Positions 10,931 to 64,000 of a stretch of DNA of 64,000 nt are shown piece after piece. Every line of letters starts with the position of its first letter. Position 1 is the first letter of the stretch. A program made the position numbers and the translations under genes. The DNA lies in contig NC_083279.1 in NCBI RefSeq assembly GCF_963506605.1, positions 9,052,001 through 9,116,000 of the forward strand, in the 5' to 3' direction. The notes under the pieces were generated by a model. It was given only the letters and a program-made list of their open reading frames with translations. It had not been told where the DNA came from and searched no databases. The stretch is from Zootoca vivipara. Lineage: Eukaryota.

Positions 10931-11205
10931 CTCTGCCTTTTAAAAACAAGAATGTGTTTTAGATGTTCTCTCTGTTTTGTTTTATGCTGGCTTTAATGTA
11001 AATGTTGTTGTGGTTATTGCTGGTTTGTGTCTGTGGAGTCTTTTTCAGGCACAACATTGGAACCAGGTCTGTCTATGTGTTTGAGATGCCCACCAGCAGA
11101 TTGCTCTCTGTGGGGCTGCTTCCTACATCTCTGGGTCTCACGTTACAGACATAGCTGTTGGGCAGCTACAAGCCAGCGTTTATATTTCCCACAATGCCCC
11201 TGATG

Positions 11206-11295
11206 CATAGCTGCCAAGTTTTCGCTTTTCTCGCGAGGAAGCCTATTCAGCATAAGGGAAAATCCCTGTAAAAAAGGGATAACTTGGCAGCTATG
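11206..11295. mobile_element. 90-bp hAT-type MITE
   Basis: Same family as 9251-9340, with TSD ccctgatg. Confidence 0.9.
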
Positions 11296-11759
11296 CCCTG
11301 ATGTGATGTTGCTCTGTGTCACTGTGCAAGGACTAAATGGCCGGCCACAGTGCAGGTTTCCAGTTAACTTTTCAACAGCGTTTCGGAGCAATGTTACAAC
11401 AGGGGGATTGCAAGAATTCAAATGGTAGTTCAAAGACTCAGCCACTTGGAGGAGCGGGCTCAGAGCACCAGGGTATCAGAGTCAAAGCAGTAGATTTTGG
11501 GCCTAATGGAAACCTTCTCCCTTTTGTATCTACTCTCAGTGCGTAACATTGATGTACAATCTCCACAACCACCAAGATCCCAAACCACACACACTTGTTT
11601 CTTCAAAGAAGAAAATCTTTAAAAAAACAAAACAAAAGAACTCCACCCTCTTTGTGTGAAAGGTTTTGTAACAAAAACTTCCATACCGAGTAATTCCAGA
11701 GCAATCCAGAATAATAATAATAAGGGGTTGGGGTGGGGGGGTTGTTCCATACAAAATGC

Positions 11760-11765
11760 TTTATT
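11760..11765 (-). promoter_or_regulatory. Candidate distal polyadenylation signal (AATAAA) of KLF12
   Basis: Plus-strand TTTATT lies at the boundary of the repeat-poor block, with U/GU-rich sequence further downstream on the minus strand. Confidence 0.5.
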
Positions 11766-36278: not shown

Positions 36279-36742
36279 ATTCCAGAGCCTCGTCTTTTTG
36301 TATTATGTTCTCTATCCTGATATCCTTGAGGTTTTTATTTACAATCAAGCGGCATATAATGTTTTGTTTTTTAAAAAAACAATATACAAAAATCCTTTAA
36401 CATTGCAGCAATCCGTTTGCTGACTACAAAAACAGGTAACAAAAATGAAAGCTGAAGAAAACGATTCATCTATCTATACTGCAGGCGGAACTGGGCCAGG
36501 TTATTTGCTTCTGGAAGCAGAAAATCTAAGTGGTTTTAGTTTTAGAAAATAGGAAATAAATGTCAAAACTGCTACTCTTTACTGGCAAATCAGTTTGCTC
36601 TCTGAGGCAGTTGCTTCACTATGTCTTACGACAGAGACAGCCCTGAAGAGCCCAAACACAGTAGCTTCTAGTGGTTTCCGTAGTGAAATTGGAAACACAC
36701 ACAGAAAGATAAAGCCAAACTTGAAGTACTGCTACGGTAGTA

Positions 36743-36930
36743 CAGTGGAACCTCGGTTTATGAACACCTTGGTTTACGAATTTTCGGTTTACGAATGCCA
36801 CAGACCCATCTGGAACGGATTAATTCACTTTCCATTACTTTCAATGGGAAAGTTCGCTTCAGTTTATGAACGCTTCAGTTTATGAACAGACTTCCGGAAC
36901 CAATTGTGTTCATAAACCGAGGTACCACTG
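36743..36930. mobile_element. Tc1/mariner (Tigger-like) MITE
   Basis: TIRs are cagtggaacctcggtttatgaaca / tgttcataaaccgaggtaccactg, with a TA TSD. Confidence 0.88.
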
Positions 36931-37291
36931 TATTGGTATTTCAACCTTAAAGAAGTAAGGAGTTGGGGCTGATGATGTAACCTTTCAGTCTGGCAAGGTT
37001 GTTGTGGGACAAATTCTTGTCGCCTGTGGCATAAATGAACGTGGAGAATTTGCCGTAAAGAAAGCCAAAGAGTCTACAGAATGGCGACCAACCCCGAGAG
37101 GATTAGAAGGAGAGAATGACTAGTCTCCATTCTGTCAAATGAAGGGATTACTCTAGGCAAGTAAATTTCTATCAGGTAGAGCAGACAAATAGTATTAAAC
37201 CATTCTTAACAAAACAAAAGGTACTGAATGGTGCTTAAAGGTCACAGAACAAGTCGAACTTATTTTTCATGTCTCCAGTCATGGGTCTTAC

Positions 37292-37306
37292 CTGTGCTTC
37301 CAACTA
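37292..37306 (-). other. Candidate 15-nt alternative microexon in the KLF12 last intron
   Basis: The minus strand reads gttcatgttttcccccctttcAG|TAGTTGGAAGCACAG|GTAAGA. It is frame-preserving and has no stop codon in phase 1. Confidence 0.4.
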
Positions 37307-38254
37307 CTGAAAGGGGGGAAAAACATGAACAAAGACTAATGACAGGTGCCATTTCTTATTCAAATAAATATCTGGTGGAGCCTGAGGAATGCAGAGTTTA
37401 AACAGGCTCAGACTAAACAAAACACAAAAGTTGTCTGCCATCCTCTCTTCTGCAGGTGTCTCAGATTTATTAAAAAGGAAAATACCTTGGACCACAGAAT
37501 GCCCTGTAACAAGGCTGCATTTCTGACATCTTTAGCAATGCCTCCATTGATCAGGAGCCCCAAAGTCTAGTTAGAGAGGCTTCTCTATAGCTCAGAATCA
37601 AGGCATTTTCTTTCTGGCACTATCGTGATCCTCTGAAATAATACTAAAGCCCACTGAGGCTGTGTATTGTGCCCTCAGTTTTCCTGGAGTTGGGTGTCAC
37701 CAAGAGCTATAAGCTGATCAGGCACAAACTCACAAGCTGATCTTATGCTCTCTGCCCAAGCTTTGCTCTGAAATGTGGGGACAACACCACTAGGCCTCCT
37801 TTGCAGGATTGTCAACAGGATTAATTAAATAATGTGCCTGAAGTGCTCTGCAAATTTGAAGTGTACTATCCATCACATCTGAACTGGGCTGATGGCTGCT
37901 AAGAGCTGGACTGTTGATAGGTCCCCTTCATTATATTTAAGGAGGCTCAAAGCGCTTTCTTTTAATCACAGGCCAAGTACTCTGAATTATAACATTATGA
38001 ACCCTTCAACTCCAACACTGAATCTTCCAGTGGAGATTGTGTGGACACACAAGACCTTAGATCCAGCTCCATGACTTCTGTTGCAAGGCTACTGAGACTG
38101 CAAGCTCTCTGGGGCACAGAATCGTATTTTGTCACTATTACACTGCAATGTGATGAGACAGTAAATAAATAGAAAGCTACCATTAAAGAAAATGTTAGTG
38201 TAAGCCAGTGTTAGAAATGGAGAAATGAAAGCAAGGAGCTAAATGGCACCTTGA

Positions 38255-41032: not shown

Positions 41033-41254
41033 ATCTAGTGCAACACTCCACGGCGCAGGGATCTTTCATCCAACGTGGGGCTCGAACCCACGGCCCTGAG
41101 ATTAATAGTTTCATGCTCTATTGACTGAGCTATCACAGCACAGTCCATCCCAACCCAATACTATCTACCATGACTGACACTGGCTCTCTGGGGTCTCAGG
41201 CAGAGTTCTTTCCTATCACCTGCCACCTGAACCTTTTCTGTATGTGTATAGCAA

Positions 41255-44116: not shown

Positions 44117-44402
44117 CAGTGGTGCCTCACTAGACGAATTTAATTCGTTCCACGGGTCTATTCTTATAATGAAAAATTTGTCTAGCGAATCCCATAGGAA
44201 TGCATTGAATATTTTTTTAAAGAAAAATTTACCCATAGGAACGCATTAATTGAATTTCAATGCATTCCTATGAGAAACCGCGATTCGCTAGACGAATTTT
44301 TCGTAAAACGAATTTGTCTAGCGAGGCAACCTCCGCTAGAAAAATCCTTTCTTTAAGCGAAAATTTTGTCTTACGGGGTGTTTGTTAAGCGAGGCACCAC
44401 TG
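44117..44402. mobile_element. Tc1/mariner (Tigger-like) MITE
   Basis: TIRs are cagtggtgcctc / gaggcaccactg, with a TA TSD. Same family as the copies at 54254 and 55983. Confidence 0.9.
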
Positions 44403-44556
44403 TAAATTAAGTCAAACTGAACACTGGGAATGGTGAGTAGACCCAGCGAAGCTAATGGGCATGACTAACTTAGGTTAACTACTTGCAAGGGGTCTACTCT
44501 GAGTGGGACTTAGTTGAATACAATCCTGGGCATAGATCTTGGTCATAGGCCTTGAC

Positions 44557-44692
44557 CAGACATCCCCAAACTCGGCCCTCCAGATGTTTTGGGACTACAA
44601 TTCCCATCACCCCTGACCACTGGTCCTGTTAGCTAGGGATGATGGGAGTTGTAGTCCCAAAACATCTGGAGGACCGAGTTTGGGGATGCCTG
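44557..44692. mobile_element. 136-bp palindromic hAT MITE
   Basis: TIRs are cagacatccccaaactcgg / ccgagtttggggatgcctg, with TSD gccttgac. Confidence 0.92.
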
Positions 44693-45217
44693 GCCTTGAC
44701 CATGAGACAATGGCATCACCATCATCGAGTGTCAAAGCAGGAGTGCCAACTTGAGTAAAGTATTGGGGAAGGAGGGCAGGTAAGCCCCCCCCCCACATAA
44801 TCACATGACACGGTGCATGCAGACCATTTGAATGGCAATGCCCATTCAAGGGGCTCAAATATTTTATTGGGCTCAGCCTCTAGGAGTTGGCTCCTATGTG
44901 CCAAAACTTGGAATTCCAAAACTGGGCAAAAATAATAGTTCTGATTTTTCAGAGTTTGACGTTAACTGAGAAAGAACAGGAACAGCAGAAGTGTGCCCAC
45001 ATGGAAGGAAAACCTCTGATTCTGAAATCACATGATGCTGGGAAGCTTAATAACCCCCAAGGCTATATGTTGAAAATAATTACTGTTTATTACACAGTGG
45101 TGAAAGCTCATTAATGTTTACTGTGCATTTTCATCATGTCAAAAACAGAACGTGCCCGCTGAGAGACAATGCCACTAGCACTGTCCATACAGCGAAAACC
45201 TTTGGCAAAACCCTTAC

Positions 45218-45375
45218 CTGTGTGCGTCCTTCGGTGAGCCTTCAGGTGGGAGCTTTTCGTGTACACCTTGTTGCACCCTTCAAAATCACATCTGTGGATG
45301 CGGCGCTTTCTAGAGTCAGGCGATTCGGACCTTCTCTGGCGCCTTGTGCTCTCAATACTAAACGGCGAAATTGAA
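45218..45375 (-). CDS. KLF12: Krueppel-like factor 12, penultimate coding exon (158 bp; basic region and zinc finger 1)
   Basis: The minus strand translates to [52 protein letters not shown](G), matching KLF12 as I recall it. It is flanked by a pyrimidine-rich acceptor (ctttccttctgtctcgcAG; AG at 45377-45376) and a donor CAG|GTAAGG (GT at 45217-45216). Confidence 0.96.
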
Positions 45376-45838
45376 CTGCGAGACAGAAGGAAAGCAGCAT
45401 GTTAATGACTGTCTGTGCCGTTTGCTGCAAAGAATGGCAGAATGCAAGAGCTTTCACAGGGAGATTGGTTGGAATGATCTCCGAACTGCTGATAGTTAAA
45501 GACTGGTTTCAAAACACAACCTTTTTTCCCTTACCATATCTCTGTCCGTAAAGTTCAACAAGATGGGACGCTTATTTTTGTGTGGCTAGAAGCTCCCTTT
45601 TCCCACAGAAGTCTTGCACAACATGTGACCCATGGAATCCAGCTTCGTGAAACAGCCATCCCTAACCTGTTTCTGCTATCTACCTGGGACTGCAAAAACA
45701 GGGGTAGGAAAGGGCATCACATTGGCTGGTGAACTGAGTTCGGCTCAACAGATCACAAGTTGTGCAGGCCTGCTCTGGAGGCTGCTCCCAAGATAAACCA
45801 ATGCATGAATTTCTTTCCCCTCTTCAAGCAACACCGTA

Positions 45839-46100
45839 CAGTGGTACCTCGGTTTGCGACCGCCTCGGGGAGTGACCGCTTTGGTTTCCGACCACCGCGG
45901 ACCCGGAAGTGTTTACATCTGGGTTCCATGGCGCTCGGATGCGCAGAAGCGACCTGCAATGTGCAGAAGAGATTTGCGCAGTGCGCGCATGCGCATAAAT
46001 GCTCGATCGGCGCTTCACACATGCGCAGAAGCGTACCTCGGGGAGCAACAACTCTGGGGCTCCCCAGAACCAATTGTGGTCGCAAACCGAGGTACCACTG
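45839..46100. mobile_element. Tc1/mariner (Tigger-like) MITE
   Basis: TIRs are cagtggtacctcggtttgcgacc / ggtcgcaaaccgaggtaccactg, with a TA TSD. Confidence 0.9.
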
Positions 46101-46731
46101 TATTTTAAAATCTGGGTGAGCATTTAATAGCCGAGATGGATGGCTAATATAGACCCAGTAGTTAAGCTCAAATACTCAGGCCATTCTATTCTAAGAAAAG
46201 ATGGGTAAGAAAACACCTTTTTACAATTAGCTGTAGGGTTTCCGAAAATACAATATTTTATGAGTGAAAGCGACATAAGATATAAAGGAAAACCGGGGGG
46301 GAGGGGGAGAGCTAACTCCTTAAAAGGAAATAATATCTCATACTACATGCCTGTTCATGCAAGAATCTTGTTCATGCCTAGTCATGTAAGATTCAAACAA
46401 GAACTATTTCACTAGTTCTAAGAAACTTCTCTCTCTTCTCCCTTAGTTAAGGGATTAGTAAGCGGTTGATTCATGCAAATAACAAATGAATTTTGTTGAA
46501 ATGACAAATTGGATTATACTAAAGCTAGAAGCAGAGCCGTCTTCATGTGCTCCTTCCATGCAAACGCTAATCCAGGGACAGATAACCTGTTGCCTTCTGG
46601 ACTAGCTGAAATAATGCTTTAATTGAAACTGCTTTTAAAATGTCTTTAATTGTTTTGGGTTGTTTTGTTTCTGAATTGTGAATGTGTTTGCCGCCCCAGG
46701 TTTCTTCAGGCGGAAGGATCAAATCAATAAT

Positions 46732-47119
46732 AAGGTAAAAGGTAAAGGTAAAGGACCCCTGAATGGTTTAAGTCCAGTCAAAGGTGACAATGGGGTGCGG
46801 CGCTCATCTCGCTTTCAGGCCGAGGAAACCGGCATTTGTCCACAGACAGCTTTCCAGGTCTTGGGGCCAGCATGACTAAACCGCTTCTGGCGCAACGGGA
46901 CACCATGAGTGCCTGAGCGCATGGAAACGCTGTTTACCTTTCCGCCACAGCAGTACATAGTTATCTACCTGCACTTTGACGCGCTTTCGAACTGCTAGGT
47001 TGGCAGGAGCTGGGACAGAGTAACGGGAGCTCACCCCGTCGCATGGATTCAAACCGCCGACCTTCTGATCAGCAAGCCCAACAGGCTCAGTGGTTTAGAC
47101 CACAGCGACACCTGTTCCC
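46732..47119 (-). mobile_element. Sauria SINE
   Basis: Full-length homologue, apparently an older subfamily. Confidence 0.9.
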
Positions 47120-47784
47120 TCCATAATGAATGAATGAATGAATGAATAACTCATAATAAATCCCAGCCAGTGTGACCAGTGGACACAGATAATGTGAACT
47201 GTAGTCCTACAAAATCTGGAGGGCCACAAGCCTTTCCCATCTCTGCACCAGAAGCACAAAAAGGGGATAGGATTCGGCCCAATGACCCTGCCCAACGTTG
47301 CTGACTCCACCCGCAAACACCTACCCACTAAGCGGTAGGCTTCCTCGCAGTTAGAAACACCAACAATTCTCTTTGCACGCATCCTGTTCAGTGCTCATTG
47401 CTGGAGGGGGGGGGGAGGCAGTGTGTGGGACTACATCTGGATGAAATATGGTGATGTCACGGCCCTGAGGGTACCCCAGCTGTTGCTCCACTTCACTGGT
47501 GGCTATTTTTTAATCACAGCTGTCAGTTCACTGTTAACCACCTTGAATTTCTTAAGAAAACTAGGTAGGGTCAAAGTTTCGAAAAAGACAAATGAATTCC
47601 TAAATGCCATTGGGTTGCCACCACTTGTTTTCATTTGCTATGAACTAAGGGAAAAAATGAGGAAGAGGAGGGAAGCAAGTCCTGCTGGTTTCAGTAGAAG
47701 CCGTGCGATTTCCCAACATTTCCAGCCTAATTCTAATCAAATTTGTCAGTTTGATCAATTCATTTGTTCCTTGCATGAGTTAAA

Positions 47785-47824
47785 GGTATCTGAAGAAGTG
47801 TGCATGCACACGAAAGCTCATACC
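47785..47824 (+). ncRNA. Minimal type I hammerhead ribozyme motif
   Basis: The motif reads GGUAU-CUGAAGA-A-GUGUG(CAUG)CACAC-GAAA-GC-UC-AUACC. Stem I, the catalytic core, stem II and the UC cleavage site are all present. Confidence 0.75.
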
Positions 47825-47915
47825 AAAATAAAAACTTAGTTGGTCTTTAAGGTGCTACTGAAGGAATTTTTTTATTTTACTTCGATCCAGACCAACACGG
47901 CTACCTACCTGTAAC
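47786..47915 (+). mobile_element. Short Penelope-like element (pseudo-LTR-derived)
   Basis: It contains a hammerhead core and the ttggtctttaaggtgctac...cagaccaacacggctacc motif typical of reptile Penelope elements. The TSD is the 12-mer catgagttaaag (47774-47785 and 47916-47927). Confidence 0.75.
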
Positions 47916-50683
47916 CATGAGTTAAAGAGTTACTAACCTTGGGGAATGCTTTCTGTTTATGAGTGATTTCTCCCCTTGGCAACTTTAGATAGTGTTACTG
48001 ACTGTGATATCTAGTAATTCGCTTTATAGTTATTACCTCCAACCAAAGGTTTTCCTTTTTTTGCAGTGCTATCACACACAGCTACTATGCGGTCACTGTG
48101 TTACACCCCCTGCTTCTCCTGTCCTTTTCAGTGTAGCTATTGATAAATGCCATTCATATAATAGTGCAAAAAGGGGGCACACAATCTAGCCAAACAGGAA
48201 GCAGCAGCCTGGGCTGCCGTTCCTTTCCTACAGGGGTTTGAATTAAACAGAGTCCAATTATTAAATGTTATTCACAATGCAGAAAGGGTGAATTAGAAAG
48301 GGCTACAGAGAAGTAGTGGAGCATTTGTTGTTTGCTGCCAAAATGTTAAGTTGTAAAAATAAAGAAATAAAAGCCCAGGAGAAAAATGAGAAAGTATCAG
48401 TGGAGGAGTGACGGAGGAAGTTTGAAATATAACATCAATAAGCAAACCTGTAGCTTAGCAACAAATCAGGCTGGGCGAGATCAACTCTACAAGTTAGTAT
48501 ATTAGAAATGTGGTAACCATTTATTCTTTACTGGGACAAACCAAGGCAGAATAACTTTTATGTTCACAAGTATTAGGTAATCTAAAAATTGTTCTCTTTG
48601 GTATGCAATGTGATAAATTTAACATGTTTCTAATGTTAAAGGGGTCTACATGAAAGGTGATTATGTCTAGAGATAAATGCTGAAGTCAACGAATAAAAAA
48701 ACCCATAATGTTTAGATATGAGTCGTGGAGTTGGAAGGAACCCCGAGTGTCATCTAGTCCAACCCCCTGCCATGCAGGGTTTCAGCAGAACGCCCAACGT
48801 GGGGCTCGAACCCACAACCCGGAGATGTTCTACCAACTGAACTATACCTAACAACTAAACTAGGTTCCCCCAATCATTTGATGCCTAGGGCATAACTTGT
48901 TTCTGGACTAACACCAGAAGTAGAACTCACGATGACAGTCACATTTGCAACACCAGGATAGCACCCTCCACTCCCCCTTGTCCTATCAGCTGGGACTCAA
49001 AGATGGAGCTGTGCCCTGTGTCTGACACCTGTGGCAGGAGTTGGTGCCACTGACATAATGAGTCGGTGAGGTTCAGCAGTAAAACTGCTAACACACTTGC
49101 AAAAGCTAAGCAGGGTCCGGTATGGTTTCAAATTGGACGAGAGACTGTGTGTTGAGATTTCTGCACTGCAAGAGGTTTGGACTCGATGACCCTTTGGGAT
49201 CTCTTCCGACTCTATGATTCTATGAACTGCAGTGTCTCCCTCCATAATGAAGTCACAGCCCATATCCTGGCTGGGGGATGGAGCAATGCTTCACTATGGT
49301 CTTATTCAGAACTGTAAATCCATTCAACACAGTGGTCTTCCCGCAACACGCTTAATACACCCCTTATAGCCCTTCTAATAGCATACTAGTGTGCCCGGGC
49401 ACACCGATTCGGAGTTGCCACCCTGAATGAATAAATGGCTTTCAAGCAAAACTTGCATTTAGCCGCTAGGTGGAGTGAGAGATCTTCAAAACGAGCAACC
49501 AAAAAGTGGCTTCAAACAGGCTGGCAATGTTATCTTTCCCTTTCTGTCAAAGGCAAGGTGGTTCATGGAAAGCAAGGTTTCTCCTCCCCACGGCAGTTAC
49601 CTGCAACCCCCCCCCCAAAAAAAGCCTCCGGGGTGAGTGAGATAGATGCTGTCTATGCCTCACAGCCTGTCCTGAAGGTGTAACAGCTTGGCAATATATT
49701 GGTAAATTGTCTGACACTGGTTCAGATCGCGATTCCGATTTCAGACCTTTTGAGCTGGCAATACATTGTGGTGGCCAGGGAGCAACGATGTATTCCCCAG
49801 CTCAGATTGCCTGCAGATGGCAAAGGCGCCGGCAGGCAGACGGAGCTCCAGAAGGTGCTCAACTGGAACTTATTGGGTTCTGTCGGCCTACCTGCCTCCG
49901 CCCGGGCGGGCTGCCTCTTTCTCCTGGTTGGTCTCTCCTGGAGGGACCAACAGGGAGGAAAGGGCAGTCCACCTGTCTGGGGCTGGGGAATCACAGGCAG
50001 AAGCCGATGTCTGCAATTGCAATAACATCCTACTCCCATAACATTGTGTTCATTGATTTTGATATACTGAGCAAGGTACGCCACAAGGTACAAATTCTCA
50101 CTGATCTATGTGCCACAATAGCACAGCACTGAAAGTAATCTAAATTTTGCGCCAAAAGTTATTATTTGGTGTCCTATTTAAATTATGCAAGCTGGACAAA
50201 TGTGGATCGTTTCTCTTCATTCTGGATTTGGCTATGAAAGGGAGGAGTAAAGACATGATGGACTGATTTTAGGAGTCAAGAGAGCTGCAAACTGTTGGTT
50301 GTTTAACTTATTATTGATATTTCATTGCCCGAGAGGAGAGAGTTGTGAGATTTTCCGCCACAGGGATCCAAATAGGCTAAAATATTACACGCTTCAATTT
50401 GGCAGGTGTGTGCATGCACCATTTTTTGGTCTCCATCAGACAACAAAATTTTTGGAGCAGCCCTGGCAGATGCAGGGGTAGGTCTCAGCAGAATCCAAAA
50501 CGACTGGCTTTTCTCTGTCTCATGATGACGATTAACCGTGCTTCGTTTGCAACGAAGGCTTAATTTACGAAGCAGCACAGGAATTATGAGTTAACTATCT
50601 TGCTCTTAATCAGGGCATAAATAATTTGCACTCTTTTTATTACACGATGAGGGAAATATAAATAAGGCAGAGTAAACTGTTAT

Positions 50684-54253: not shown

Positions 54254-54539
54254 CAGTGGTGCTCGCTAGACGAATTTAATTCGTTACACGGGTCTTTTCC
54301 TATAACGAAAAATTCACCTAGCGAATCCCATAGGAATGCATTGAATTTTTTTTTGGAATTTTTTTTTGCCCATAGGAGCGCATTAATTGAATTTCAATGC
54401 ATTCCTATGGGAAACCGCGATTCGCTAGATGAATTTTTCGTAAAACGGATTCGTCTAGCGAGGCAACCTCCGCTCGAAAAATCCTTTCGTTAAGCGGAAA
54501 TTTCGTTAAGCAGGGCATTCATTAAGCGAGGCACCACTG
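54254..54539. mobile_element. Tc1/mariner (Tigger-like) MITE
   Basis: It has TIRs and a TA TSD, and is homologous to 44117-44402. Confidence 0.9.
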
Positions 54540-55532
54540 TACATACACAGCATTGAGTGGGGATTGTAAACAGTATTCTTAATTTGTTAATGTTACTTCT
54601 TGGCTCTAGGTGGCACCACAGTCTTAAATTTGTCTAGCTGTAATAAACTCTTTGGCCTTTGTTCTTCCTCCTTGAAGGTAATTCCACACTTCCTGCTTTC
54701 TCCACAAGATACAGACCTCACTGACCTGCACAGGGGAGGAAAAATTACTGCAGAGCTTTTTTGCTAATAGGAACCGGACTGATCCCTGCGCATAAGCAGA
54801 AAGATGCTTCAATGGGCGCAAACCAAGTGTGGATTAAAAGCCTGAAGAGGGAAGGGAAAAGGAACATTCATTCCCTTTGGCTATCAGTTGACTTGTTAAG
54901 GATCACTCAGAAGAATCCTTTATCCCCCAACAAATAAAGCTCTGGAGTAGGTAGACAAAGGATTAAAACACACAAACAAACAAACAAACACACAACAGGA
55001 GGGAATAAATAAACAAGGGGCCTAACAGGATCAGTGAGGACCTGGGGTTAAGATGCTGAATCCAGGCTAAAATGAAAGTGTACACTTTGCAGATGCTTAG
55101 AAAAAATAAAACGCTGCAGAGGAAAACCAAGCAGACTATCTCGCATTTGACACAAAGGGGAAAGTTGACACATGGCACACAACCACGAGAACCCTGGTTT
55201 TACTGTGTTGGAAAGGACTGGCAATATGGTAAGCACAACTGCTGAAAGGAAACCTGGGAATGATGGTCAAAATTGTGTGTGTATGCAATAGTAATTTATA
55301 AGATTTGCCCTGCTAGACTGTTCAGATAGTGGCTGAAACATGATCGGATCAAATAGGGATGTGGGGGTATTCTTTTGTTTTTGTTCCAGCTATTTATTTG
55401 TGCTTCTATCTTGTATTTTTATCTTGTGAACCGCCCTGACATCTTCAGACGAAGGGCGGTATATAAATTTAATAATAATAATAATAATAGTTGAGACTCA
55501 AGATGGCTCAAGCGTAATCTCAGGGGCGGCTG

Positions 55533-55982: not shown

Positions 55983-56266
55983 CAGTGGTGCCTCGCTTAA
56001 CGAATGCCCTGCTTAACGAAATTTCCGCTTAACGAAATGATTTTTCGAGCGGAGGTTGCCTCGCTAGACGAATTCGTTTTACGAAAAATTCGTCTAGCGA
56101 ATCGCGGTTTCCCATAGGAATGTATTGAAATTCAATTAATGCGTTCCTATGGGCAAAAAAAATTCCAAAAAAATTCAATGCATTCCTATGGGATTCGCTA
56201 GACGAATTTTTCGTTATAAGAAAAGACCTGTGGAACGAATTAAATTCATCTAGCGAGGCACCACTG
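55983..56266. mobile_element. Tc1/mariner (Tigger-like) MITE, inverted relative to 54254-54539
   Basis: It is the reverse-complement homologue of 54254-54539, with a TA TSD. Confidence 0.9.
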
Positions 56267-57117
56267 TAAATAATAGAAGGGATCTTAACAGAAGCTTGAA
56301 ATTTTGCGTTTCGGCATGGCCTTATAACATATGCATATATTATACATATGCACACTGTATTTAAACAAATTATGACAGAACACCATTCTATTTACTCCCT
56401 TTTTCTTATGTTAATAAGGCCTTAAGTCCCAACTGGAGAGCAGCTGTTAACTGTCACAAATATTCTTCATTGTTATTACTCCAAGTCAGAGAATGACTGG
56501 AAAAGGGGAAACCTAAAATGAACTGGAAAATGAAGTTCCGGATTTATTATCAAATCCATGATTTCTTATCAACTGCAAGGCTGATTGAAGCATCTAAGTT
56601 TGACAGCTGTCCAAGAATAATGCGTATAATGGGGAATGGCAAAGATACTTCATGTAAGGGCTATTTACTTACATTAAATCAGAGGTGGTAAATTTGAACC
56701 TATAAAAGTTGTTGGGGGAGTTGTAGTCCATCGACATATGCAGGGCCATATGCTCTCCATGGCTGCACTGCACCAAATGATGGCTTGTAGGCAGATGAAA
56801 AAGTCAGAGAACAAGCACAAGAAACTTACTATTCACTTCACATCTCCTGAGCACTGAAGTTAATTTCACATATTCTGCGATTAGCTGTCAAGCAATGGTC
56901 ACACATGCATGTGTGAACCAATCCAATGTTCCAAACTCACATTTACTAAAAAAGTTGTTTTTAGTTAGTGAAGTTTTATTACTCCTCATTAAAAGTTCAA
57001 GCTACATTCAAACAAAACCCTTTTGAGGTTTTTTAAAAAATTAAATTTTACAACCAAGGGGAATAGTTTTATTTTAATGAAATAAATAAAATGTATGCAT
57101 TACAAAGGGACAAAAAA

Positions 57118-63669: not shown

Positions 63670-63912
63670 CAGTGGTACCTCTACTTACGAATTTAATGTG
63701 TTCCGAATGCACATTCGTAAGTCGAAAAAATTTGCAAGTCAAATCCCATAGGAATGCATTGGGAGAAAAAATTAGTAAGTTGAAGCAACCCTATCTAAAA
63801 ATTCGTAAGTGGAAAAAATCCTATCTAAACCACATCCAAGATGGCGGACGGAGCTCCGTTCATAAGTAGAAACATTTGTAAGTAGAGTTATTCATAAGCA
63901 GAGGTACCACTG
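63670..63912. mobile_element. Tc1/mariner (Tigger-like) MITE
   Basis: TIRs are cagtggtacctct / agaggtaccactg, with a TA TSD. Confidence 0.88.
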
Positions 63913-64000
63913 TACCACCCATGCGCAACAGGGGAGAGTCAGACGACTTAGGGTCTACCTATAGAAATCTCAGCTTGGTGGTGGTTACCTGTCCAGCACA

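What the first reader, a model, noticed from the sequence alone, without database searches (positions are those of the whole stretch)
37286..37345. Candidate KLF12 microexon that would lengthen the ZF1-ZF2 linker (WT1 +KTS-like switch)
Seen: in non-repetitive sequence in the 24-kb last intron, the sense (minus) strand reads gtctttgttcatgttttcccccctttcAG|TAGTTGGAAGCACAG|GTAAGA. A clean polypyrimidine acceptor and a near-consensus donor sit exactly 15 nt apart. The intron is phase 1, so inclusion gives ...HRRTHT-VVGST-GEKPY... with no stop. The acceptor is a NAGNAG (CAG TAG), so a 12-nt form (VGST) is also in frame. Established: the TGEKP linker is important for C2H2 DNA binding, and the 3-aa KTS linker insertion in WT1 alters its DNA/RNA binding. 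Inference: this could be a splice-controlled switch of KLF12 DNA binding; I know of no described isoform of this kind. Caveats: there is no UGC (SRRM4) motif next to the acceptor, and pseudo-exons do arise by chance.
Basis: partly seen in the sequence, partly recalled or inferred. Interest (0 to 1): 0.8.

Follow-up and report, generated by a model that had tools for sequence, protein, structure and literature searches.

The report
Candidate KLF12 microexon, still unproven
A 15-base stretch with strong splice signals sits in the last intron of a lizard KLF12 gene and would add five residues to a DNA-binding linker if spliced in, but I found no transcript, annotated isoform or conservation evidence, so it is most likely a chance pseudo-exon.

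Summary
The sequence is exactly as described. On the minus strand a pyrimidine-rich acceptor (18 of 20 pyrimidines, CAG), 15 bases (37306..37292) and a CAG|GTAAGA donor lie in the 24.2-kb last intron of KLF12. That intron is phase 1 and separates finger 1 from fingers 2-3. Inclusion would give HT-VVGST-GEKP without a stop, and the TAG acceptor would give VGST.

By a simple splice-site matrix this is the only AG-(3-30 nt)-GT pair in the 64-kb window, on either strand, with both sites scoring 6 bits or more. The expected number is about 0.01 for this intron. Genome-wide that still predicts hundreds of chance cases.

Nothing shows that the exon is used:
- Three raw RNA runs and one contig set of the same species gave zero depth even on the real upstream exon, so the test says nothing.
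- About 190 KLF12 proteins with both fingers were checked, twelve of them canonical squamate isoforms. None has a 4-5-residue linker insert.
- No UGC or UGCAUG microexon enhancer motif lies nearby.

Other sauropsids do have annotated, non-homologous alternative exons in this intron, and some lengthen the same linker.

Odds: chance pseudo-exon about 0.75, noisy or cryptic use about 0.17, regulated switch about 0.06. The scan has not found this before on other DNA.

The parts
37307..37329 (-). Candidate 3' splice site. It has a possible branch point UUCAU (A at 37326, 20 nt before the exon), a tract with 18 of 20 pyrimidines, and a CAG (AG at 37308-37307). A second AG at 37305-37304 makes it a NAGNAG.
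   Evidence: sequence and pyrimidine count; score 7.1 bits, and 6.8 bits for the TAG acceptor. 23 of 4321 AGs on this strand score as well.
37292..37306 (-). Candidate 15-nt exon TAGTTGGAAGCACAG. In phase 1 it reads (G)TA GTT GGA AGC ACA G = V V G S T, with no stop.
   Evidence: the read-through translation starts VVGST.
37285..37291 (-). Candidate 5' splice site, CAG|GTAAGA(C). It matches the consensus at 8 of 9 positions.
   Evidence: score 7.1 bits. 8 of 3366 GTs on this strand score as well.
45218..45375 (-). KLF12 exon encoding ...[27 protein letters not shown] and zinc finger 1. It ends HRRTHT plus the first base of the Gly codon.
20859..21040 (-). Coding part of the last KLF12 exon: (G)EKPY, zinc fingers 2 and 3, ...HRRRHMLV and the stop codon.

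Best explanation
The candidate is a chance pseudo-exon: a strong acceptor and a strong donor that happen to lie 15 nt apart, in frame, deep in the 24-kb last intron of KLF12. It is not spliced into mRNA, or only at noise level, because an exon this short cannot be defined across itself without dedicated enhancers, and none is visible here. KLF12 is made with the canonical HTGEKP linker. The sequence, the frame and the rarity of the pairing are shown. The claim that it is not used is inferred.
For: At the rate seen on this strand (23 acceptors and 8 donors as good per 64 kb), about 0.03 in-frame-length pairs are expected per 64 kb of intron. That means hundreds per genome, so a scan of 779 windows of this genome should meet several by chance.

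179 of 189 KLF12 proteins that have both fingers show HT-GE-KP, and none has a 4-5-residue insert. Twelve squamate isoforms from 9 species are canonical, among them Lacerta agilis, which belongs to the lacertid family the scan's notes assign this genome to.

The nearest UGC to the acceptor is at -87, and there is no GCAUG within 120 nt. The RNA shows no unusual structure (z = -0.08) and there is no Rfam match. No paper links KLF12 to a microexon of this kind.

The alternative exons that other species annotate in this intron are mutually non-homologous and do not match this window. That pattern looks like splicing noise or lineage-specific exonisation in a long intron.
Against: The pairing is the best in the whole window on either strand, and it is locally improbable (0.007-0.03 expected). 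Both sites score about as well as the real KLF12 sites. The length is 3n, there is no stop, and both NAGNAG forms stay in frame. The exon regenerates ...S-T|G-E-K-P in front of finger 2. Absence of expression was not shown, because the RNA runs gave zero depth on the real exon too.
Confidence: 0.75

Rival explanations
1. The splice sites are used, but only at low level or in a lineage-specific way and without a dedicated function. One possibility is a rarely included 15/12-nt cassette. Another is that the acceptor alone opens an alternative terminal exon. If the donor is skipped the frame reads VVGSTGKTHDWRHEK-stop, which gives a finger-1-only KLF12 like the truncated isoforms annotated in other sauropsids.
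For: Many species have annotated alternative exons in this same phase-1 intron. Pogona vitticeps X4 ends HT-ELHINNADLRHFAT*. Grus, Tyto and Empidonax end HT-GLLLRGILNKAPS*. Phalacrocorax and Cuculus continue HT-AQE(S/Q)SQHKL.... Coturnix X4 ends HT-DSI*. Numida X2 has a 53-residue in-frame cassette. Rhineura floridana X1/X2/X4 have a 30-residue linker extension. The read-through of the candidate stops after 15 codons. The splice sites are strong.
Against: No transcript evidence exists for this species (one search was uninformative). The first AATAAA lies 967 nt downstream. None of the foreign alternative exons matches this region. Most are computer-predicted models.
Confidence: 0.17
2. This is a genuine, regulated microexon. 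Tissue-specific inclusion inserts VVGST (or VGST) between the last His-Thr of finger 1 and GEKP. That removes the T-G helix cap and lengthens the linker, so the protein binds CACCC boxes more weakly or differently.
For: The frame, length, NAGNAG and site strength are all compatible. The pairing is locally improbable. A KTS insertion in a WT1 finger linker is an established precedent for changed DNA/RNA preference (PMC5100589). Linker-lengthening KLF12 models exist in Rhineura and Numida.
Against: No isoform of this size appears in about 190 KLF12 proteins. Known microexons are, by general knowledge, the most conserved class of alternative exons, yet none is annotated here in any vertebrate sampled. 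No UGC or UGCAUG enhancer motif is nearby. There is no RNA support.
Confidence: 0.06
3. The acceptor is orthologous to that of the alternative exon annotated in two related songbirds (Acridotheres tristis and Mimus melanotis), which also begins HT-VV.... That would make it an old sauropsid splice site.
For: Both begin with Val-Val after HRRTHT. That is compatible with the same first six bases after the AG.
Against: No similarity exists beyond the two residues. The bird peptide has no match near 37.3 kb. About ten different foreign exon starts were inspected, so a VV start by chance has a probability of roughly 0.2 (my estimate). The bird models are submitter annotations from two sister families only. 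Bird DNA could not be fetched.
Confidence: 0.02

Closest known systems
WT1 +KTS/-KTS isoforms
   Same: Alternative splicing inserts a few residues into a TGEKP-type linker between two C2H2 fingers and changes DNA versus RNA preference (PMC5100589).
   Different: By general knowledge, WT1 uses an alternative 5' splice site at the end of an exon (9 nt), the event is conserved in vertebrates and both forms are abundant. Here the insert would be a separate 15-nt cassette 8 kb into an intron, with no evidence of use or conservation.
Neural (SRRM4/nSR100-dependent) microexons of 3-27 nt
   Same: Size, 3n length, preserved frame, and location in a structured functional domain of a regulator.
   Different: No UGC lies between the pyrimidine tract and the AG (the nearest is at -87), and no UGCAUG is nearby. 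No annotated orthologous isoform was found in any vertebrate sampled.
Intronic pseudo-exons and cryptic exons in long introns
   Same: Consensus-like acceptor and donor in a long intron with no transcript support. The rate measured in this window predicts hundreds of such pairs per genome.
   Different: It is much shorter than typical pseudo-exons, and both sites are as strong as the real ones.
Annotated alternative exons in the KLF12 last intron of other sauropsids (Rhineura floridana X1/X2/X4, Numida meleagris X2, Pogona vitticeps X4, several birds)
   Same: Same phase-1 intron. Rhineura (+30 residues) and Numida (+53) lengthen the very same finger 1-finger 2 linker, and others truncate the protein after finger 1.
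   Different: They are much longer, not homologous to each other or to this window, and mostly computer-predicted models. Rhineura's is a read-through of the donor, not a cassette.

Membership tests
KLF12 gene (host) | Exons encode the KLF12-specific segment before finger 1 and the three C-terminal C2H2 fingers ending HMLV | tested here: met
   Both exons are 100% identical to proteins named Krueppel-like factor 12. Pfam zf-C2H2 matches once in the upstream exon and twice in the last exon.
Bona fide cassette exon | Functional AG acceptor with a pyrimidine tract and a GT donor | tested here: met
   both sites score 7.1 bits, within the range of the real KLF12 sites (7.3-9.7). MaxEntScan was not available.
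Bona fide cassette exon | Spliced reads joining it to the flanking exons | tested here: inconclusive
three raw RNA runs (about 6% of each was read) and one contig set gave zero depth on the upstream exon 45218-45375 itself. Either expression is low or the human-likeness filter removed the reads.
Bona fide cassette exon | Presence in annotated or transcript-derived proteins of this or related species | tested here: not met
   no 4-5-residue insert in about 190 KLF12 proteins. Isoforms hidden inside 90% clusters were only sampled.
Neural SRRM4-type microexon | Length of 3-27 nt that preserves the frame | tested here: met
   15 or 12 nt, phase 1, no stop.
Neural SRRM4-type microexon | UGC-containing enhancer just upstream of the 3' splice site, or a flanking UGCAUG | tested here: not met
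   UGC occurs only at -87 and +123, and there is no GCAUG within 120 nt.
Neural SRRM4-type microexon | Conservation of the exon and flanking intron across vertebrates | not testable with these tools
ORFs around the site are not in the protein collection. No vertebrate genome collection is on hand.
WT1 KTS-like linker switch | Insert falls inside a canonical H-TGEKP-Y/F linker between two DNA-binding fingers | tested here: met
   In silico only: HT|VVGST|GEKP.
WT1 KTS-like linker switch | Both isoforms are made, and they differ in nucleic-acid binding | not testable with these tools
   This needs RT-PCR or RNA-seq and binding assays.
Recursive splice site | The AG is directly followed by a GT so that a 5' splice site is regenerated | tested here: not met
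   The sequence after the AG is TAGTTG.

The most novel reading that the evidence does not exclude
A real, tissue-regulated 15/12-nt microexon in lacertid KLF12 that inserts (V)VGST between finger 1 and the GEKP linker. It would be the first KTS-like, splice-controlled modulation of DNA binding in the SP/KLF family. It may be one instance of a wider sauropsid habit of making finger-crippled KLF12 isoforms from this intron.
Probability: 0.06. Interest if true: 0.75.

Novelty: not a real feature. Interest (0 to 1): 0.22.

Why it matters
If the exon were used, a five-residue insert in the most conserved linker of a transcriptional repressor would give a simple, testable switch of DNA binding in a family where none is known. 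The finger region of KLF12 is 91-100% identical from sharks to mammals. As it stands, the case mainly shows that a very clean in-frame pair of splice sites can be expected by chance at genome scale. Sequence alone cannot promote it to an exon. The by-product may be more useful: predicted KLF12 isoforms in several sauropsids lengthen the same linker or drop fingers 2-3 through unrelated exons of this intron, and that could be checked with real transcript data.

Tried and rejected
- **RNA evidence.** The look-up of sequencing runs on 11101-21100 gave three raw RNA runs of the same organism and several contig sets. Read laying on 44300-46299 was chosen because loose ends at the 45218 donor would tell GAGAG... 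from TAGTT.... All four runs had zero depth on the exon, and only an interspersed repeat at 44570-44690 collected reads.
- **ORFs as handles.** Six spurious ORFs around the site were tried as handles for homologous contigs. None is in the collection.
- **Upstream-exon word search.** The search with the 52-residue upstream exon returned only genomic ORFs of other KLF genes.
- **Foreign alternative exons.** Homology between alternative exons of other species and this intron was tested, and nothing scored below E = 0.05.
- **Recursive splice site.** Rejected, because no GT follows the AG.
- **Structured RNA or known RNA family.** Rejected.
- **Repeat origin.** Rejected within the window.
- **Upstream KLF12 exon.** None was found between 45376 and 64000.
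- **Joined spliced protein.** The joined model (finger 1 + insert + finger 2) was deliberately not built, searched or folded. The exons were searched one by one by reference.

Full report
**Observation**

The minus strand at 37345..37286 reads ...gtctttgttcatgtttttcccccctttcag|TAGTTGGAAGCACAG|gtaagaccc.
- The AG is at 37308-37307.
- The 15-nt candidate exon runs 37306..37292.
- The GT is at 37291-37290.
- A UUCAU that fits the branch-point consensus has its A at 37326.
- 18 of the 20 bases before the CAG are pyrimidines.
- The CAGTAG offers a second acceptor three bases further on.

**The host gene**

- The upstream exon (45375..45218) ends ...CAC CGA AGG ACG CAC ACA G|gtaagg.
- The last exon starts at 21040 with GA GAG AAA CCA TAC.
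- They translate to ...[12 protein letters not shown] and [11 protein letters not shown]...HRRRHMLV*.
- Pfam finds one C2H2 finger in the first and two in the second.
- The intron is 24,177 nt long, phase 1, and splits the Gly codon of the HTGEKP linker between fingers 1 and 2.
- Proteins that are 100% identical over both exons are named Krueppel-like factor 12 in dozens of vertebrates.
- Inclusion of the 15 nt would read HT-VVGST-GEKP, and the 12-nt form HT-VGST-GEKP. Neither has a stop.

**Is it more than chance?**

I scored all AG and GT dinucleotides of the window with a simple position matrix.
- The candidate acceptor scores 7.1 bits (6.8 for the TAG) and the donor 7.1 bits.
- The three real KLF12 sites score 7.3, 7.8 and 9.7.
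- On this strand 23 of 4321 AGs and 8 of 3366 GTs do as well.
- The candidate is the only AG-(3-30 nt)-GT pair in the whole window, on either strand, with both scores at or above 6. The next best pairs score below 6 on both sites or below 5 on the donor.
- From the marginal counts the expected number is about 0.08 per 64-kb strand for any length, 0.03 for lengths divisible by three, and 0.01 for this intron.
- 150 third-order Markov simulations gave 0.007 per strand.

The pairing is locally unusual. The same rate gives about 0.45 per Mb of intron, which is hundreds per vertebrate genome. This scan has already read 779 windows of this genome, so meeting one such chance pair is expected.

**Other properties of the site**

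- The 600 bases around the site have no other copy in the window.
- The RNA has no unusual structure (z = -0.08).
- No Rfam family matches there.
- The motifs that usually help very short exons are missing. The nearest UGC to the acceptor is at -87, no GCAUG lies within 120 nt, and there are no intronic G-runs.
- No GT follows the AG directly, so it is not a recursive splice site.

**RNA evidence**

The look-up of sequencing runs, given the last exon plus 10 kb downstream, returned DNA runs holding 90-96% of the words. It also returned smaller contig sets of the same organism holding 37-48%, which are probably transcriptomes with the 3' UTR, and three raw RNA-seq runs of 2026.

I laid the three raw runs and one contig set on 44300-46299. 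A read crossing the 45218 donor would show in its loose end whether GAGAGAAACC or TAGTTGGAAG follows. All four runs had zero depth across 44,900-45,700, including the constitutive finger-1 exon. Only an interspersed repeat at 44570-44690 collected reads. The tool read about 6% of each run and silently drops reads that resemble human DNA. The result therefore says nothing about KLF12 splicing.

**Cross-species DNA**

- Six ORFs around the site, tried as handles for homologous contigs, are not in the protein collection.
- Conservation of the AG, the GT and the length therefore remains untested.

**Protein survey**

The library search with the finger-1 exon and two word searches with full-length KLF12 were followed by a look into ten clusters. 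Together they gave about 200 KLF12 proteins.
- 189 have both finger 1 and finger 2, and 179 of those have the canonical HT-GE-KP.
- None has an insert of 4 or 5 residues.
- Twelve squamate isoforms from nine species are canonical: Anolis carolinensis X1 and X2, A. sagrei, Varanus X1 and X3, Lacerta agilis, Elgaria, Rhineura X3 and X5, Naja, Eublepharis and Sphaerodactylus.
- Earlier notes of this scan call the genome the common lizard, a lacertid (I did not check this). If so, Lacerta agilis is a close relative.
- Limits: isoforms within 90% clusters were only sampled, and I could not see this species' own annotation.

**What the survey did show**

This intron is a hot spot for annotated alternative exons in sauropsids.
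- Rhineura floridana isoforms X1, X2 and X4 read through the donor for 30 residues (HT-GKRISGQ...RYVYT-GEKP).
- Numida meleagris X2 has a 53-residue in-frame cassette.
- Pogona vitticeps X4, many birds, a marsupial and a caecilian end in short tails right after HRRTHT and so lack fingers 2-3.
- Ab initio models in Mimus, Hirundo and Sciurus insert 37-93 residues, and an unnamed model (P0023) inserts 110.
- An Ensembl model of Latimeria has HT-DL-GEKP.

These exons are not homologous to one another. None matches this window's intron (best E = 0.06, and nothing near 37.3 kb).

The exon of two related songbirds begins HT-VV... like the candidate. With about ten exon starts inspected and no further similarity, I treat that as coincidence.

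If the candidate's donor were skipped, the frame would read VVGSTGKTHDWRHEK-stop. That is a finger-1-only protein of the kind seen elsewhere, but the first AATAAA is 967 nt away.

**Literature**

No paper in the library links KLF12 to a microexon or a linker isoform.

**Mechanism and odds**

- **Chance pseudo-exon (0.75).** The most likely reading is a pseudo-exon that the spliceosome ignores. By general knowledge, an exon of 15 nt is too short for simultaneous recognition of both sites without dedicated enhancers. None is seen here, and no annotated protein shows the product.
- **Noisy or cryptic use (0.17).** Low-level or lineage-specific use of the acceptor, as a cassette or as the start of a truncating terminal exon. 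This is in line with the noisy exon content of this intron in other species.
- **Regulated switch (0.06).** A regulated KTS-like switch.
- **Old shared acceptor (0.02).** Shared origin with the songbird exon.

The sequence, frame, rarity and survey are shown. Non-use is inferred.

The exons were handled one by one by reference. The scan's only other record of this feature is the same stretch (s1-853944), so it has not been found before on other DNA.

Noticed in passing
window 44570-44690: An interspersed repeat collects hundreds of RNA reads in both orientations in all three raw runs and very deep contigs in X1. About 97% of the laid raw reads run on into unlike sequence. It looks like a highly abundant, transcribed SINE-like family and is not KLF12 expression.
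   Followed up: no
window 41075-41132 (-): A tRNA-like sequence, Rfam RF00005 at 35.1 bits, inside the KLF12 intron. It is probably the head of a tRNA-derived SINE.
   Followed up: no
window 47774-47927: Another note of this scan (s1-854093) calls this a hammerhead ribozyme in a Penelope-type insertion. The Rfam scan of the whole window at gathering thresholds listed no hammerhead. I did not try a permissive scan.
   Followed up: no
window 36741-36774 and 36898-36932; related copies at 45836-45868, 46064-46104, 54486-54542, 56217-56268, 63891-63919: A short inverted repeat (35-nt arms, 91% identical) lies 400-500 nt from the candidate, with related copies elsewhere in the window. It looks like a MITE-like family.
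   Followed up: no
window, minus strand, near 46927, 23158, 4430, 1250, 885: Five copies of one repeat family share a similar translated stretch (...SSCQPSSSKA...TAFPCAALV...). They turned up while I was looking for an upstream KLF12 exon.
   Followed up: no
other species (P0326, P0280, P0279; P0281): RefSeq models of Rhineura floridana KLF12 (isoforms X1, X2, X4) extend the finger 1-finger 2 linker by 30 residues by reading through the donor. Numida meleagris X2 has a 53-residue in-frame cassette in the same intron. It is worth checking against reads whether linker-lengthened KLF12 is really made.
   Followed up: partly
other species (P0325, P0284, P0297, P0332, P0285, P0302, P0304, P0305, P0306, P0293): Many annotated KLF12 isoforms in birds, Pogona, a marsupial and a caecilian end a few residues after HRRTHT and lack fingers 2-3. 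Some tails are shared between bird orders: GLLLRGILNKAPS in crane, owl and flycatcher, and AQE(S/Q)SQHKL in cormorant and cuckoo. This may be a recurrent finger-1-only form that keeps the N-terminal part.
   Followed up: partly
window 20826-20840 (-): A run of 14 A lies in the 3' UTR about 25 nt after the KLF12 stop codon. It could act as an internal priming site in oligo-dT libraries.
   Followed up: no
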